NCBI RefSeq assembly: GCF_001194135.2
Contig: NC_068983.1
Coordinates: 134,246,462-134,310,461, forward strand
From: Octopus bimaculoides
Lineage: Eukaryota
Direction: 5' to 3'
DNA length: 64,000 bases
Shown here: positions 8,505 to 52,268 of the stretch, one piece after another
Layout of the letters: each line of letters starts with the position of its first letter
How positions within the stretch are numbered: position 1 is the first letter of the stretch
Translations under genes and position numbers: made by a program
Notes under the pieces: generated by a model
What the model saw: only the letters and a program-made list of their open reading frames with translations
What the model was told of the DNA's origin: nothing
Database searches by the model: none

Positions 8505-8956
8505 TACACACACGCACACATACATACACACACACACACATACACACATATGATCAAGCAAACACCAAAGACACTGATGTTAGTCTGCATCGGCAAGACA
8601 TATTTTATGTTGCAGAGTCAATAAATAGAATGTTTGTTTCTATATCGAGTTATAATAAAAATAATTTTACAATAAGTTGAAGGATTACTCGTTTCTTTTT
8701 GTAGATTAAATATTTATTATTCTTTATGAAGAATAGCGATGACAGTGATTTCCAAGTTTCGACCTGCTTAGCCTCACTACTCAGATGTGTGTGCGTGTGT
8801 TTGTGTGTGTATTTGTGTATATATATATATGTATATATATATATTGTTGTACTTGGGGATGGTCATATTGCCAGTTTAGCCAATAAAAACACACGCACTG
8901 TATATTTGGTGTTAATTTGCTTCAGCTTTATATTACATTAATCTTAATCTTATTTC

Positions 8957-9001
8957 GGCCAGAGTTCTTTCGTCACACTTCTGTGAACTCATCAGTGGTC
9001 C
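8957..9001 (-). ncRNA. Candidate minimal type I hammerhead ribozyme
   Basis: Minus strand reads GGACCA-CUGAUGA-GUUCAC(AGAA)GUGUGAC-GAAA-GAAC-UC-UGGCC: intact core, G-C first pair of stem II (6 bp with one bulge), stem I CCA/UGG plus GG/CC, CUC triplet. Stem III has only 2 bp and a 2-nt loop. Confidence 0.5.
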
Positions 9002-9239
9002 TTTGTTTCCTTCCTTCTTATGTGTGTCTCACCTTGCTAACTATCAGCCATTTTGTATTTTGTATTCCTATTGTATGTGTCTACGCATGCGTGTCCTTCA
9101 ATGTGTCTGTGTCTTTTGTAAGTGCATGTGTGTATGGGGAGTGTCTATATCACCTATATTCTCTGTTAATACGTGTTCGTTTGTATTTGTTTTTATTTAT
9201 TTATTTGTTCATTTGTTCATTTATTTATTTTCAAAACAA

Positions 9240-23247: not shown

Positions 23248-24268
23248 GGTGGTGGTGGTGGTGGTGGTGATGAGGATGATGATGATCCAGCAGATATATA
23301 ATGATAGACATTCAACCATCATCATCATCTCGTCTTTTCAGGACGCAGCATGTCAACGACTTATTCAACATGTCCTCCTTCATAAAGTCTGTGGTGCGAT
23401 TTAAAGATTTAGCTGCTATTTGTAGCAGATCGAGCGACCCCATAGACACGCTTTCATTGGTTTATGAAGCTCCTTCGCTGCTTTGTCCTTTTTACATTTG
23501 CTTTTTAACATCAGAATATAGGCCACTGAGCAAAGCTAAGAGCAAAAACAGCCCAACTCTCACGTCATTTGCTTACAGACAGCTTATCCAATATGACCTC
23601 CCTTTCATTTTTTTAAAAGTTAATAGGTTTAGATTTGAGAGGTATTTGGCTGCCAGTTTAAGGGGAATTTGATTTCCAGGAGTCATCGTTGTTGTTATCG
23701 CCGCCCTCAATATTGATAATGTCATCGTTTTAGTTAGATAACGGAAATAGCAAAATAAATAAGGTATTTTGCAAACCAGTTGTGATTATTTTACGACAAT
23801 TGAACAACATTTTCAGATTCGTCATTATTTTCTAAATAAACAATTTCTAGTGAATGTGATGCACAGAATTGTGTAAATTTCTTAAACGTAATTTTTGTGA
23901 ACAGATAAGTTTGCTTGTCAGTAAACTGACCGCAAAAGAAATATAGAAAGCTTTGTTAGAAGCAAATAAATTCTCGACTAAGGAGTGGTATGTAGTTTTA
24001 TGTGTATATGAATGTAAGTGTATGTAAAAATGTATAAAATGATATATATATATATACATACATACATTCATGCATACATACATAATTGTATGTATGGGTG
24101 TGCATATATAGTTATTCAATCGTCGCTTAAATAATGGCGAGGTTATACACGTCTAAGCACATAAAGACAGGTGTACGCATATATATGTGTGTGTGCGTGT
24201 ATGTATATGTGTGTATGTGCGCGCGCGTGTGTGTATATGAGTGTGTGCGTGTGTGTGTATGTATATAT

Positions 24269-26048
24269 ATTGTCATCAAACCGGCCGAAAAGGGTGGAGC
24301 TGTAGTGTCATGGTGCGCGGACCTTTATAAAGCTGAAGCTCTCCGCCAACTTCAAGACATCTTCTGTTACCCTCTGCACTCCAACCCCACGTGTAACTAC
24401 CAACAGACTTTGTCATCCACTATTCGTGACCTCATTTCCTCCTCCCGTCTCTCTCCTACCTCCTCCAACCTCATTGTCCGTACTCCGCGCATCCCCACTA
24501 TTTACTTCATTCCCAAAGTTCACAAGACAACAATCTTGGCCTCCCCATCGTCTCCGCCTGCAACTACCCCACGGAAATGATCTCCAAATACCTCGACCGT
24601 GTCCTTGCTCCCCTAGTGGCTTCCCTCCCGCATCTACAACACCAACCATGCTCTCTGTCTGGTTAACTCTTTCTCCTTCCCTTCTGGTCCCTCTTAACTT
24701 CTGTTCATTCTTAATATCAAAAGTTTATGTACGATGATCCCACACAACGAAGGACTTCTTGTGCTTAAACACTTTCTAGACCTTCGGCCTGACCCTCAAC
24801 CTGCCACCTCCACACTTCTTCGACTGGTCGAACTTGTCCTCTTCCTCAACTGCTTCTCGTTCGCAGGGGAGTTTTACCAACAAAAATTCGGCTGTGGCCA
24901 TGGGAACGAGAATGGACTTCAGCTATACGAACCTGTTTGTTGGCTACGTTGAGGCTCAAATATTCTCACAATTCACTGGTCCCACTTCTGAGCTATACGG
25001 TCATTATATCGATGACTTTATTGACGCGACCTCACTCCCCCACGAACAACTGGAATCCTTTCTCTCCTTTGTCCAATCTTTCCATCCTGCCCTCAAATTC
25101 TCGTGCACTCTCTCTAACTCTTCTGTTGAATTTCTCGATATTTGTCAACATCCACCACTCCGCTCTCAGAACCCCCATCCACTACAAACTCACTGACTCA
25201 CACTCCTACCTTAACTTCTCCTCTTCCCACCCTACCCACACTGAGCTCTCCTTCTCCTACTCCCAATTCCTCCGTCTACGTAAGCTCTACAATGGCGACC
25301 ATGACTTTCAGACTCAGTCTCAACTCATGACTCGCCACTTCCTCCTACGTAGATATCCCTTCACCATTATCCACACTGCCTTTATCCGGGCACAATCTGT
25401 AGACCGTGCCTCTGCTCTTTCTCCTCATACCCGCCCCACCCATACCCGTCTCCTGTTTCCCCTCACCTACCCCACCTCTACCCTACCCCTCCAACGTACC
25501 ATTCTCTGAGCCTTCCCGCGACTCCAGACCTACCCTTCCACCTCGTACATATTCTCTAACATACCTCTTCCCTCCTTCAAACGAGCCCATAACATGCGTG
25601 ACCTCGTGGTCCACAGTTTCTTCTGTACCCCCGCATCCTAGTCTGGCGCCTTCCCTGCTCCCACTACACTGTCGCACCTCTCCAACACCACCATCGTCAC
25701 AGGCACTCATCACCGTCCTTATCATATCACCGACTCCTTTACATGCACTTCTAGTAATGTCATTTACTGCATCTCCTGCTCTCTCTGTCCTTCTCTGTAC
25801 ATTCGTCGAACAAGATGCCGCTTGGCTGACCAGTTCGTGGAGCACTTCCGGGTCATCAGACTCGGTAATGACACCCGGTCTCGTGCTATTTCCGTTCTAT
25901 CAGTCATTCACTACAACACCTATCTGTTTTCGGACTGTCTCTGCACAGGGGCCACCCGGGCTCCTGTCTACATCGTGAAGAGGAATTAATCTTCTCTCTT
26001 CGTACCTTAGTGCCATATGGGCTCAACTCACCTCCTCTCTTCATTTGA
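24269..26048 (+). mobile_element. Penelope-like retroelement remnant (probably Neptune-type): frameshifted RT plus GIY-YIG endonuclease
   Basis: PLE motifs in order across frames: IVIKPAEKGGAVVSW, IYFIPKVHK, AMGTRMDFSYTNLFVG, YIDD, HYKLTDSHSYLNFSSSHP, YSQFLRLRKL, CTSSNVIYCISCSLCPSLYI..T...L...F.EH, C-terminal EELIFSLRTLVPYGLN then TGA at 26046-26048. 5'-truncated at a TG/TA microsatellite. Confidence 0.92.
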
Positions 26049-34890: not shown

Positions 34891-36054
34891 CACATGTCTA
34901 TATACATATACACGCGCGCGCGCGCGCGCGCACACACATATATATATATATACAGAGAGAGAGAGGGAAAGAAAGAAAGAGAGAGAGAGGGGGAAGAAGA
35001 CATGAGCAGTATATATTGGGACATTTTTAATTTGTGTTTCATAAACAGACTAATGAGGTTGAAAAAAGCTAATATCTAAAATCCAATAATGAATTCTTAG
35101 AGTAAATGAGGAACTAAACGAAAAGATACTGTAAAATATTACAAATAGCATTTATTAACATAAAACATATTAAATATATCTAATTGCCTAATATATATAT
35201 ATATACATATACATACATACATACATACATACATACATGCATATCTACATATATGTGCGTATATATCCAATTAAAATGATAAGACGTATGTGTGTGTGTG
35301 TGTTTGTGAGTGAGTGTGTGTGTGTGTAAGTGTGTGTGTGTGTAAGTGTGTGTGTGTGTATGTATCTGCCTATCTGTGTGTGAGTAGACAAACACACATC
35401 AACCTAGATAATGCAATCTTACTTCATCTAACTGGTTGTGCACCGCGACTCAACAGGTAATCCGTGCTATGACGTTATGTCCATACAGATTGATCAAACA
35501 GGAAGAATTAGCCACAAACAGACCACATAAAAAAAAAATGAAATATTTACAACTTCTCTCGTGGAACATCAAGATATTACAATGATCGTTCATAATATGT
35601 ATGCACTATACATATTAGTTGTAGACCTCACAAGTGTCTACATATATATACATATATAAAATATACAAGAATAAGGGCAGGGAATCGTCAATTAATAATA
35701 GAATTAATAATTAACAATTTTGCCAAGTAGTTCAGTATGAAAAAACCTTTATCGGTAAAACCATTTATCATCATAAATATACAGGGATTAGCATTGAGTT
35801 GCTTCTCCAACATACTGAAAATTTAGAAATAGCAGTCAAAGAACTACTGATTCTAAACTACAAATTTTTCTCTAAACGGATGGCGATATTTATGGCACAC
35901 CTAGAACAAAAAACCGGAGGGAAAAGCATAAACAAAACAAGTCTTTAGTTAATCGGATACGATCGTTTCATGGTTAAGAGAATGAAAATTTCTCTATTCC
36001 AAATCTTCAGTCCGATATTCTGATAAATTTGAAAGTGTCTATATATATATATAT

Positions 36055-36692
36055 GTAGGAATAATAAATCTCTGAGCGAGATGTAAACAGTAGCAGCACG
36101 ACATCGTGAAGTATATTTGCCACCTAAATGAAGCTAACCCATATGGGACGATGCTACTGTAGTTTATAGCCCCAGGAAAACATCTCGTTTAGCTGGCTAA
36201 CGACACACTGTCTGTGCCCGATCAGTATTTGCGAAGAGAAATCATTGAGAAGGGATGAGAAGTGATTCCGAACGCAAAATACTGTTTTTCCAGTGACAAA
36301 CCGTCGCTGATCTCGAAAAAAAGAGAAACGTCACGAAGTTGTGCTGCTACTGTTTACATCTCGCTCAGAGATTTATTATTGCTTGTTTCTCCTTTTTCGA
36401 GATCAGCGACGGTTTGTCACTGGAAAAACATAGTATTTTGCGTTCGGAATCACTTCTCCTCCCTAGCCGGTGATTGCCACACGCTGATGACGGGTGACTA
36501 CCCAGAAACCCGGGTCTGTGTGTATCACGTAAGGGTAGAGATGGAAATGATGATTTCCCTTCGCAAATGCTGATCGGACACAGTGTCTCGTTAGCTAGCT
36601 GGAGGAGATGTCTTCCTGGGGCTATAAACTTATAAACTCTAGTAACATCGTCCCATATGGGTCAGCCATATTTAGGTGGCAAACATACTTCA

Positions 36693-36696
<4 letters not shown>
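36055..36696. mobile_element. Non-coding fold-back element with three interleaved inverted-repeat pairs and a hammerhead ribozyme, inserted in a (TA)n tract
   Basis: A 36060-36109 / A' 36331-36380 (48/50 identical); B 36103-36245 / B' 36550-36696 (roughly 85% by eye); C 36251-36329 / C' 36385-36464 (near-perfect, small indels); flanked by (TA)n at 36040-36054 and 36695-36758. Mobility is inferred; there is a single copy in this window. Confidence 0.7.
36470..36528 (+). ncRNA. Type I hammerhead ribozyme (dimer-type stem III), predicted cleavage after C36516 (GUC)
   Basis: Stem I CACACG 36478-83 / UGUGUG 36517-22 plus distal GUGAU 36470-74 / AUCAC 36524-28; core CUGAUGA 36484-90; stem II GGGU-GACU-ACCC 36492-36503 with a C.A mismatch at its base; GAAA 36505-08; palindromic ACCCGGGU stem III; GUC triplet. 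Confidence 0.8.
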
Positions 36697-36760
<64 letters not shown>

Positions 36761-50899: not shown

Positions 50900-51582
50900 G
50901 CAATATACACCCAGTGGATAATTTTTTTCTGTTGAAGTATCTTAAATGACCCCTAAATATGTCTTTATCCCTTAGTATATAGTATACCATAGTAATGGTC
51001 TGCCAACCTTATATCGTAAGGTTTTTAGTTGTCCATAAATGACTTGCTTTGCAATTCTATCATCATTCATTCGCAAAATATAACCACAACACCCCAGTTT
51101 AACCCTGATCAGGAAATTTCCTATGCCAGGGAAGTTACACATAGACAAAATATCACTGTTCCTCACTATATCATCCCATTTTATTTTGCATATTTGTCCC
51201 AGGCTTCTCATATGAAGGCCGTTTCCTTTATTACTACCCCATTTATTTCATTTATTACTACCCCATACAAGAGAGTTGTTATGACGACTGCTTTATAGAT
51301 TTCAATTTTGGTTTTAATAGAAACTTCATGATTATTCCATAGTCTCTGGCACGGTTTGCCAAAAGCTGAACAAGCTTTGCCAATACGTGTTTCAATTTCT
51401 TTATAAAGCTTGGAGTACTGTTTGTCACAGTAGGGTCAAAATAGGTGAAAGAACAGGCTGTTTTAAGAACTTTTCTTTCAATAAACACTCTAGGCATAAT
51501 CTTTGGAGTATTACCGAGACAAGGATGAAAGAAAGGGTCGTTCTTTTTAATGCTTATCGTCAGGCTGAAGGATCTGGCAGCT
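50900..51582 (-). mobile_element. RTE-clade LINE fragment (C-terminal RT region)
   Basis: Minus-strand peptides AARSFSLTISIKK, FTYFDPTVTN, RSLGQICKIKWDDIVRNSDIL, GYILRMNDDRIAKQVIYGQL...GRP match the RTE/BovB pattern FGLxISxKKT...F.YLGS...LRRILxIxWxDxVxN...GHVxRMxDxRIPKQLLYGEL...GRP. Confidence 0.85.
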
Positions 51583-52268
51583 GAGTAAGATTACAATTAA
51601 ATTTACATATGCACGTTTAACAAACATCTCTTTAACTTCGCTCTGGGAACAGGCCCTTTTGGCCAGAGGGTTTCTCTGGAACGCTAAACCTATTTATCTA
51701 TTTTCTATGTCATAAATTGAGGTGAGTTCCTAAGTAATTCAACCAATGTCAAGTATAAAAGTGACCATTTAAAAACTAATACAATCAGCCAGAAATACAT
51801 TTGTGAATAAATAGAAATAAACTTTTAGCATTCGCTGAAATACCTTGTTATATTATCAGCATCTTATGGCTTCTTTGACGTCATAAGTCTCATTCCAGTG
51901 ATCCTAATAACTCTGAAGCACTTTATTTGTACTTAATGAACGCTTGTAGAAATCGGATCAATGAGTGGTGGCGGTCATTGAAAAGAATAATACGTGCGAA
52001 ATCTGTACTATTTCTGAAATAATATATTCTATACTCTTGTGATTTTAGTTTTAAAATCATTAAAATGTCCCAGTGTTTCCGTGAAGTGAGATGACTGGCC
52101 ACATCACAAAATTAATGGCCATACTTTACAATTACAGATAAACACTAGAAACAAAACTAATAGTAGCAAAATTTCTTCAAACCATACCCTACCGTCATAA
52201 AACAGAAAAATCGTATTGAGCATCATAACTTGAAATGATCATAGATCCGTTCAATTAGGGTTGACTAG

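What the first reader, a model, noticed from the sequence alone, without database searches (positions are those of the whole stretch)
36055..36696. Ribozyme-bearing fold-back element: three interleaved inverted-repeat pairs plus a hammerhead in 640 bp, inserted in (TA)n
Seen: the order is A(36060-36109), B(36103-36245), C(36251-36329), A'(36331-36380), C'(36385-36464), hammerhead(36470-36528), B'(36550-36696). Only about 40 of ~640 nt lie outside a pairing segment. There is no convincing ORF, and both ends abut (TA)n. B/B' closes a ~145-bp stem that contains two branches, the ~75-bp C/C' hairpin and the ribozyme. Established: hammerheads in animal genomes are associated with Penelope-like elements and with non-autonomous retrozymes that replicate through highly base-paired RNA. 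Inference: this may be an undescribed non-autonomous, RNA-mediated mobile element, retrozyme- or viroid-like in structure, mobilised in trans (for example by the PLE families also present here) and targeting TA microsatellites. A simple MITE does not explain the A/A' pair or the ribozyme.
Basis: partly seen in the sequence, partly recalled or inferred. Interest (0 to 1): 0.92.

Follow-up and report, generated by a model that had tools for sequence, protein, structure and literature searches.

The report
Head-to-head hammerhead retroelement copies
The "triple fold-back" is two copies of one ~359-base, non-coding repeat with a hammerhead-ribozyme motif, joined head-to-head inside a (TA)n microsatellite as Penelope-like retroelements typically insert, so it is a new family of a known kind rather than a new kind of element.

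Summary
All three inverted-repeat pairs, the hammerhead-like motif and the (TA)n flanks are at the stated coordinates. A generic type I hammerhead descriptor hits the window once and hits none of 1000 shuffled windows.

The interleaving has a simpler cause than an RNA fold. The reverse complement of 36057-36329 aligns colinearly (92.5% identity) to a head-to-tail dimer of 36328-36696. The locus is therefore two copies of one ~359-nt unit (A'-C'-HHR-B'). They lie in opposite orientation with their 5' ends abutting, and they are opened at different points of the unit. The inverted copy has lost the 85-nt hammerhead segment.

Three related loci from one unrelated sequencing run carry the same unit. 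Two are solo copies. One is a head-to-head pair with different breakpoints and no interleaving.

An inverted upstream copy, a read-through of the unit junction (a short "tail"), a microsatellite target and a hammerhead are published hallmarks of Penelope-like-element insertions and of animal non-LTR retrozymes.

Verdict: a new member of a known kind. Rfam does not recognise the ribozyme, it has a C·A mismatch at the base of helix II, and its activity is untested.

The parts
36040..36054 (.). Left flank: (TA)7.5, a remnant of the target microsatellite
   Evidence: Read directly.
36057..36329 (-). Inverted copy of the unit. Its sense strand is the minus strand, its 5' end is at 36329 and its 3' end at 36057. 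It covers unit positions 36385 -> 36696 -> 36338 -> 36383, which is once around the unit, minus the hammerhead segment.
   Evidence: colinear alignment to a dimer of the right copy, 248/268 identical. Searches show the inverted repeats.
36057..36102 (-). This is the start of the next unit (the equivalent of A'), read through past the B' end of the inverted copy. It is a 46-nt 'tail', or tandem/circular junction read-through.
   Evidence: left(rc) 36102-36057 aligns to right 36338-36383 directly after 36158-36103 aligns to 36641-36696. PLE tails of 30-40 bp are described in PMC8557442.
36246..36250 (-). Scar of the 85-nt deletion that removed the hammerhead segment from the inverted copy
   Evidence: One search shows a gap opposite 36465-36549. 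All four related copies have this segment in place.
36328..36696 (+). Direct copy: one full unit A'-C'-HHR-B' (359 nt, 36338-36696), preceded by 10 nt (36328-36337, ACGTCACGAA) that repeat its own 3' end (36687-36696, ACTTCACGAT)
   Evidence: The L015 direct copy starts at the same point, about 5 nt before A'.
36470..36528 (+). Type I hammerhead-like motif. Helix I is 36470-74/36524-28 plus 36478-83/36517-22. CUGAUGA is 36484-90. C36491 and A36504 form a C·A mismatch. Helix II is 36492-95/36500-03 with loop GACU. GAA is 36505-07. Helix III is A36508-U36515 and C36509-G36514 with the palindromic loop CCGG. C17 is 36516 and predicted cleavage is 36516/36517.
   Evidence: No Rfam hit.
36695..36758 (.). 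Right flank: (AT)32, the target microsatellite
   Evidence: period 2, 32 copies, 100% matches.

Best explanation
The locus is one old insertion, into a (TA)n microsatellite, of a ~359-nt non-coding retroelement that carries a hammerhead motif. I call its parts A'-C'-HHR-B'. The element has no ORF, so it must be copied by a reverse transcriptase/endonuclease supplied in trans, most likely that of a Penelope-like element (PLE). That makes it an animal 'non-LTR retrozyme' or PLE-dependent, SINE-like repeat.

Shown here:
- The insertion consists of two copies with their 5' ends abutting in the middle and their 3' ends facing the microsatellite.
- The right copy is one unit plus 10 nt.
- The left copy is inverted, runs across the B'->A' unit junction, is also about one unit long, and has lost the ribozyme segment.

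Inferred mechanism:
- Both nicked strands of the target primed reverse transcription on the same kind of template (twin target-primed reverse transcription).
- That template was either a circular RNA, a multimeric RNA, or a linear RNA with end-to-end template jumping. Any of these lets a copy read across the unit junction.
- Each cDNA stopped after one turn, when it met the already copied stretch.

The interleaved inverted repeats are a by-product of this permutation and are not a functional RNA fold.

The hammerhead has a 2-bp helix III with a palindromic loop, so it probably acts only in dimeric or multimeric transcripts, if it acts at all. The two copies have since diverged by about 7.5%.
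For: - Permutation: rc(36057-36329) aligns in one colinear path to a dimer of 36328-36696, from 36385 round to 36383, 248/268 identical, with a single 85-nt gap at 36465-36549.
- A family exists elsewhere. A spurious-ORF search led to three contigs of Logan run SRR11869391 carrying the unit at 68-79% identity.
- Arrangements in the relatives. L015 is a head-to-head pair, with the inverted copy upstream, different breakpoints and no interleaving. L017 and L018 are solo copies without inverted partners.
- The L015 direct copy begins within about 5 nt of the same unit start as the window's direct copy.
- The ribozyme segment sits between C' and B' in all four relatives.
- The hammerhead helices are 85.5% paired over five copies, against 8-56% when the partners are slid.
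- The descriptor is unique in the window, with 0 hits in 1000 shuffles.
- Literature on PLE insertions: they form partial tandems, often with an inverted 5'-truncated copy at the 5' end and a 30-40-bp tail at one end. They prefer (TA)n and carry hammerheads in their pLTRs (PMC8557442).
- Literature on hammerheads and retrozymes: animal type I hammerheads have helix I of 6 bp, helix II of 4 bp, and helix III of 1-2 bp with a palindromic loop (PMC4209133). Animal non-LTR retrozymes are 170-400-nt, low-GC, ORF-less units. One axolotl family has a mismatch at the base of helix II (PMC7229834). Retrozymes are related to PLE pLTRs (bioRxiv 10.64898/2026.07.22.740005).
- A decayed PLE-type reverse transcriptase lies at 24131-25986. 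Its best relatives carry RVT_1/HTH_animal domains and sit next to a GIY-YIG gene.
Against: - No autonomous PLE with a matching 3' end or pLTR was found. The PLE relic in the window and the PLE in L014 share nothing with the unit.
- No head-to-tail array with two ribozymes was seen, so the defining tandem layout of retrozymes is only implied by a single junction read-through.
- No Rfam hammerhead model matches.
- The usual G10.1-C11.1 pair is replaced by C·A.
- The MFE fold prefers an alternative pairing, CGGGU/ACCCG, over helix II.
- There is no significant covariation with five sequences.
- Only four independent loci were available, and the source genome itself could not be searched.
- (TA)n flanks occur at this locus only.
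- Twin priming and once-around termination are inferred from a single locus.
Confidence: 0.7

Rival explanations
1. One reading: the whole 640-bp fold-back, with three interleaved helices plus the ribozyme, is itself a new retrozyme- or viroid-like mobile RNA element.
For: The composite folds extremely well (-366.7 kcal/mol, z = -30). Its ends abut (TA)n.
Against: The fold follows trivially from the inverted duplication. The order does not recur in any of the three related loci. A/A' is topologically incompatible with B/B' and C/C'. The permutation explains all three pairs with one relationship. The ribozyme is present in only one arm.
Confidence: 0.04
2. Two independent insertions of the same family, in opposite orientations, into one (TA)n hot spot.
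For: The arms differ by 7.5%, and by 18-28% in L015. PLE endonucleases favour microsatellites (PMC8557442).
Against: No (TA)n remains between the copies. They abut, and overlap by 2 nt, at 36328-36330. The same head-to-head order, inverted copy upstream, recurs in L015. It is also the published single-event PLE pattern.
Confidence: 0.1
3. A fragment of a tandem hammerhead satellite that was rearranged at the DNA level, for example by fold-back template switching during replication or repair, rather than by retrotransposition.
For: The permutation shows that a tandem or circular progenitor existed. Hammerhead satellites are known in amphibians and schistosomes (PMC7229834).
Against: There is no array in the window. 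The relatives are dispersed solo copies sharing the B' 3' end with variable 5' ends, which is a retroposition signature. Both copies are almost exactly one unit long.
Confidence: 0.1
4. A MITE or foldback DNA transposon with ~145-bp terminal inverted repeats (B/B') and TA target duplication.
For: Long terminal inverted repeats lie next to TA repeats.
Against: A lies outside the supposed left terminal repeat yet is homologous to internal sequence. L017 and L018 have one arm only. Copy ends do not coincide with the ends of the supposed terminal repeats.
Confidence: 0.03
5. Assembly artefact, such as a chimeric palindromic read or a collapsed repeat.
For: The window is a draft with 5603 N. PLE tandem/inverted structures are known to trouble assemblies (PMC8557442).
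Against: The arms are 92.5% identical, not 100%. They are permuted and differ by indels, which read artefacts do not produce. An analogous head-to-head pair is present in independent assemblies of two runs (L015 and L016).
Confidence: 0.03

Closest known systems
Animal non-LTR retrozymes (Cervera & de la Peña 2020, PMC7229834; Li, Clavereau & Pollet 2026, bioRxiv 10.64898/2026.07.22.740005)
   Same: An ORF-less unit of 359 nt (published range 170-400). GC is 45.7%. It carries one type I hammerhead with helix I of 6 bp, helix II of 4 bp, and a 2-bp helix III capped by a palindromic tetraloop. A mismatch at the base of helix II has a precedent in axolotl HHR_Amex2. A PLE is present in the same genome region.
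   Different: It is not seen as a head-to-tail array; only one unit junction is read through. Copies are dispersed, or paired head-to-head. Rfam does not detect the ribozyme. Circular RNA and self-cleavage are untested.
Penelope-like element insertion architecture (Craig et al. 2021, PMC8557442) and PLE hammerheads (Cervera & de la Peña 2014, PMC4209133)
   Same: An inverted copy lies immediately upstream of the direct copy. There is a junction read-through, or 46-nt tail, at one end only. The target is (TA)n. The repeat contains a hammerhead, and helix III is palindromic.
   Different: There is no RT/GIY-YIG ORF in the element. No sequence similarity was found to the PLE relic at 24.1-26.0 kb or to L014. 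PLE min-hammerheads have one unpaired base 5' of a conserved G10.1-C11.1 pair, whereas here there is a C·A mismatch.
Schistosoma Sm-alpha, a SINE-like repeat with a hammerhead (Ferbeyre et al. 1998, cited in PMC4209133; the comparison rests on my own knowledge)
   Same: A non-coding repeat of roughly 335-360 nt carrying a type I hammerhead, dispersed in an invertebrate genome.
   Different: As far as I recall, Sm-alpha has a tRNA-like Pol III head. No tRNA-like sequence is present here. The two share no sequence.
L1 twin-priming inversions (Ostertag & Kazazian 2001; from my own knowledge, not checked here)
   Same: Two cDNA segments joined 5'-to-5', with both 3' ends facing the target. Both nicked strands prime on the RNA.
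   Different: In L1 the two segments are different parts of one linear RNA. Here both are the same whole unit, which needs a repeated or circular template or a template jump.
Plant LTR retrozymes (Cervera et al. 2016, PMC4918200)
   Same: A non-autonomous retroelement with a hammerhead, thought to move through circular RNA.
   Different: The plant elements have type III hammerheads inside real LTRs, with a PBS and PPT. They are 600-1000 nt, have high GC, and are mobilised by Gypsy elements. None of these features is present here.

Membership tests
Hammerhead ribozyme, type I | Invariant core C3-U4-G5-A6-N7-G8-A9 ... G12-A13-A14, the A15.1-U16.1 pair, and H17 at the cleavage site | tested here: met
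   CUGAUGA 36484-90, GAA 36505-07, A36508-U36515, C36516. One descriptor hit in the window and 0 in 1000 shuffles.
Hammerhead ribozyme, type I | Three helices around the core, with helix I open | tested here: met
   17 pairs, with 85.5% of cells paired across five family copies against 8-56% for slid partners. There is no significant covariation, and the MFE fold prefers an alternative to helix II.
Hammerhead ribozyme, type I | G10.1-C11.1 closing pair of helix II | tested here: not met
   C36491·A36504 takes its place. The same C...A is present in three of five family copies.
Hammerhead ribozyme, type I | Match to a curated Rfam hammerhead covariance model | tested here: not met
   No hammerhead hit at gathering score or at E <= 10 on 1.8-kb and 121-nt slices. 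No positive control could be run.
Hammerhead ribozyme, type I | Self-cleavage at the predicted site | not testable with these tools
   This needs in vitro transcription of monomer and dimer constructs, or mapping of RNA ends.
Animal non-LTR retrozyme | Short (170-400 nt), low-GC, ORF-less unit carrying a type I hammerhead | tested here: met
   359 nt and 45.7% GC. No credible ORF. The hammerhead is as described above.
Animal non-LTR retrozyme | Head-to-tail tandem copies, each with a hammerhead | tested here: inconclusive
   Only the B'->A' junction read-through in the inverted copy and the 10-nt terminal redundancy point to a tandem or circular progenitor. No array is present in the window or in L015-L018.
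Animal non-LTR retrozyme | Expressed as linear and circular RNA of unit length | not testable with these tools
   No transcriptome data were accessible.
PLE-mobilised insertion | Inverted 5'-truncated copy immediately upstream of the direct copy; partial tandem or tail | tested here: met
   Window and L015, with the inverted copy upstream in both. The 46-nt tail is at 36057-36102.
PLE-mobilised insertion | Microsatellite target, typically (TA)n | tested here: inconclusive
   (TA)n lies on both sides here. In L015 the flank is (GT)n(GC)n. L017, L018 and the 3' side of L015 have no clear microsatellite.
PLE-mobilised insertion | 3' end or pLTR shared with an autonomous PLE of the same genome | tested here: not met
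   There is no similarity to the PLE relic at 24131-25986 or to the PLE locus L014. The rest of the genome could not be searched.
MITE / foldback DNA transposon | Conserved terminal inverted repeats at both ends of every copy, with a target-site duplication | tested here: not met
   L017 and L018 have a single arm. A lies outside the supposed terminal repeat.

The most novel reading that the evidence does not exclude
Both copies are 'once-around' cDNAs: 358 of 359 unit positions are spanned by the inverted copy, and 359 + 10 nt by the direct copy. They were primed at two different sites of the same closed template. If that template was a ribozyme-processed, ligated circular RNA, this locus would be a direct genomic footprint of circular-RNA-templated, twin target-primed reverse transcription by PLE machinery. 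That step has been proposed for animal retrozymes but never documented. The family's conserved C·A at the base of helix II would then define a hammerhead variant that current models miss.
Probability: 0.2. Interest if true: 0.6.

Novelty: new member of a known kind. Interest (0 to 1): 0.35.

Why it matters
This corrects an attractive but wrong reading. What looked like a new, densely base-paired ribozyme element is the standard tandem/inverted scar left by PLE-type retrotransposition. The example is very compact, so the whole scar can be read in 640 bp.

The locus is a useful annotation case. Permuted head-to-head copies can mimic pseudoknotted RNA structure. The ribozyme family escapes Rfam, so hammerhead-bearing repeats of this type are probably under-counted in this genome.

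The near-exact unit length of both copies gives a testable prediction about the template (circular, or linear with template jumping) used when retrozyme-like repeats are mobilised.

Tried and rejected
- Rfam on the whole window at gathering score, and on 1.8-kb and 121-nt slices at E <= 10, gave no hammerhead. The only hits were generic hairpin miRNA models on the inverted repeat and on (TA)n.
- Rfam on the second hammerhead-like site at 8920-9040 also gave nothing usable, so it could not serve as a calibration.
- BLASTN and an nhmmer family profile against the window found no further copies.
- An 18-mer scan of the metagenome contigs gave 13 loci. All are chance matches of 18-22 nt.
- A protein search with the 103-aa plus-strand ORF gave no hits.
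- A profile search with the alignment of spurious ORFs returned only the two proteins already known.
- Pfam on ten window ORFs gave nothing relevant.
- The organism could not be identified. The run accessions are in no held paper, window ORFs are not on record, and the cluster look-up returned no names.
- There is no tRNA-like SINE head. The bacterial-type promoter and terminator scan was uninformative.
- The unit on its own is not rod-like or viroid-like (z = -1.9 to -3.5, about 62% paired).
- Covariation support for the hammerhead is not significant with five sequences.

Full report
**1. The observation**

- Inverted repeats were found at 36057-36112 / 36328-36383 (93% complementary).
- A further set at 36103-36168, 36161-36211 and 36212-36245 pairs with 36631-36696, 36580-36630 and 36550-36583 (88-91%).
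- A third set at 36240-36320 pairs with 36393-36475, including a 38-nt perfect core. BLASTN of the element against the window confirms all of these.
- (TA)7.5 precedes the element and (AT)32 follows it.

The hammerhead motif has every invariant core base.
- CUGAUGA is at 36484-90 and GAA at 36505-07.
- The A15.1-U16.1 pair is 36508/36515, and C17 is 36516.
- Helix I has 6 + 5 bp and helix II has 4 bp (GGGU/ACCC).
- Helix III has 2 bp and is capped by the palindromic loop CCGG.

A generic type I descriptor finds this one site in 64 kb, on both strands, and nothing in 1000 dinucleotide-preserving shuffles. I wrote that descriptor after seeing the motif. No Rfam hammerhead model reports the site, even at E <= 10.

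**2. What the three interleaved repeats are**

I aligned the reverse complement of the left part (36057-36329) to a head-to-tail dimer of the right part (36328-36696). It forms a single colinear path.
- The path runs from right-copy position 36385 to 36696 and then straight on from 36338 to 36383.
- 248 of 268 aligned bases are identical (92.5%).
- There is one large gap, opposite 36465-36549.

The three pairs are therefore one relationship. Two copies of one 359-nt unit (A' 36338-84, C' 36385-464, ribozyme segment 36465-549, B' 36550-696) lie in opposite orientation and are opened at different points of the unit.
- The right copy is one unit plus 10 nt that repeat its own end (ACGTCACGAA / ACTTCACGAT).
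- The left copy spans 358 of the 359 unit positions and lacks the ribozyme segment.
- The ribozyme lies on the plus strand of the right copy, so the two copies meet 5'-to-5' and their 3' ends face the microsatellite.

As RNA, A/A' could only coexist with B/B' and C/C' as a ~50-bp pseudoknot inside a 55-nt loop. The huge folding energy of the composite (z = -30) is simply the inverted duplication. The unit alone folds only modestly better than shuffles (z = -1.9 linear, -2.4 circular, -3.5 for the minus strand; about 62% paired).

**3. Relatives**

The element is unique in the window. Neither a metagenome 18-mer scan nor a search with the plus-strand ORF found relatives.

An exhaustive protein search with the 98-aa minus-strand reading frame over the ribozyme region found three spurious ORFs. 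These led to three different contigs of Logan run SRR11869391, and an identical one from SRR11869385. The organism is unknown.
- All carry the unit at 68-79% identity.
- L015 has a direct copy that starts about 5 nt before A', as in the window.
- L015 also has, immediately upstream, an inverted copy truncated inside the ribozyme segment. Together they form a plain nested inverted repeat, 72-266 / 408-616, flanked by (GT)n(GC)n.
- L017 and L018 each carry one solo C'-HHR-B' copy and no inverted partner.

All four relatives have the ribozyme segment between C' and B', so the window's inverted copy lost it by deletion.

In the five-copy ribozyme alignment:
- The core is intact in three copies and mutated in two (L017: A6C and G12A; L018: C3G).
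- The helices are 85.5% paired, against 8-56% for slid partners, but without significant covariation.
- A C...A flanking helix II, in place of G10.1-C11.1, is present in three of the five copies, so it looks like a family trait.

**4. Mechanism**

The following points are established in the literature.
- PLE insertions form partial tandems. They often have an inverted 5'-truncated copy at the 5' end and a 30-40-bp tail at one end.
- PLEs prefer microsatellites, (TA)n for Naiad and Neptune, and carry hammerheads in their pseudo-LTRs (PMC8557442).
- Animal type I hammerheads typically have a 1-2-bp helix III with a palindromic loop and work as dimers (PMC4209133).
- Animal non-LTR retrozymes are 170-400-nt, low-GC, ORF-less hammerhead repeats expressed as circular RNA. 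One axolotl family has a mismatch at the base of helix II (PMC7229834).
- Retrozymes are related to PLE pseudo-LTRs (bioRxiv 10.64898/2026.07.22.740005).

A decayed PLE-type reverse transcriptase lies 10 kb upstream at 24131-25986. It shares no sequence with the unit.

My inference is a single PLE-mediated event in (TA)n. Both nicked strands primed cDNA synthesis on a closed or repeated template: a circular RNA, a multimer, or a linear RNA with end-to-end template jumping. Each cDNA ended after one turn.

Five of the six family copies end at the B' end. This favours a preferred priming site, or a defined 3' terminus. The 46-nt read-through in the left copy would then be the known PLE 'tail'. 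That the left copy's 5' end and the end of its tail fall within 1 nt of each other on the unit is what suggests once-around copying. This rests on one locus.

**5. Comparison with known elements, and verdict**

The locus fits the animal non-LTR retrozyme / PLE-dependent repeat class in unit size, composition, lack of ORF, ribozyme architecture and insertion scar.

Several defining features are unmet or unproven.
- There is no tandem array and no Rfam match.
- The closing pair of helix II is non-canonical.
- No partner PLE was identified.
- There are no RNA or cleavage data.

It is not a MITE, not an assembly artefact, and not a new structural class. I rate it a new member of a known kind, of moderate interest. 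The main open point is whether once-around copying is general in this family.

Noticed in passing
window 8939-9002 (-): A second hammerhead-like site: ggaccaCUGAUGA-GUUCACAGAAGUGUGAC-GAAA-GAAC-UC/UGGCC. Helix II is 6 bp with one bulged U, and helix III is 1 bp. This resembles published PLE 'min-HHRs'. (TA)n/(CA)n lies about 100 nt downstream on that strand. Rfam does not recognise it, and it failed my strict descriptor.
   Followed up: partly
window 24131-25986 (+): A frameshifted relic of a Penelope-like element. It has RT motifs (AMGT..., YIDDF...) whose best relatives (55-59% identity) carry RVT_1/HTH_animal domains and sit beside a GIY-YIG gene. It also has a weak GIY-YIG-like stretch (VIYCISC...YIRRT...EH) at 25642-25986. 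No hammerhead was seen next to it, and it has no similarity to the 359-nt unit.
   Followed up: partly
window 50975-51590 (-): ORF fragments that, from my own reading of the sequence, look like the C-terminal part of a non-LTR (LINE-type) reverse transcriptase. Pfam gave no hit.
   Followed up: no
whole window: This is a draft assembly with 5603 N in several gaps. It has very frequent (TA)n, (TG)n and (ACAT)n-type microsatellites, and many long 'ORFs' that are only translated microsatellites.
   Followed up: partly
window 36057-36696: A read-through transcript of the locus would fold into a hairpin of about 270 bp of near-perfect dsRNA. That would be a plausible substrate for Dicer or ADAR. 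No expression data were available.
   Followed up: no
L015 1-60: At the outer end of the inverted copy the terminal B' motif (GG..GCAAACA) appears twice, about 25 nt apart, before (GC)4(AC)7. This may be a short terminal duplication or a tail. It was not resolved.
   Followed up: no
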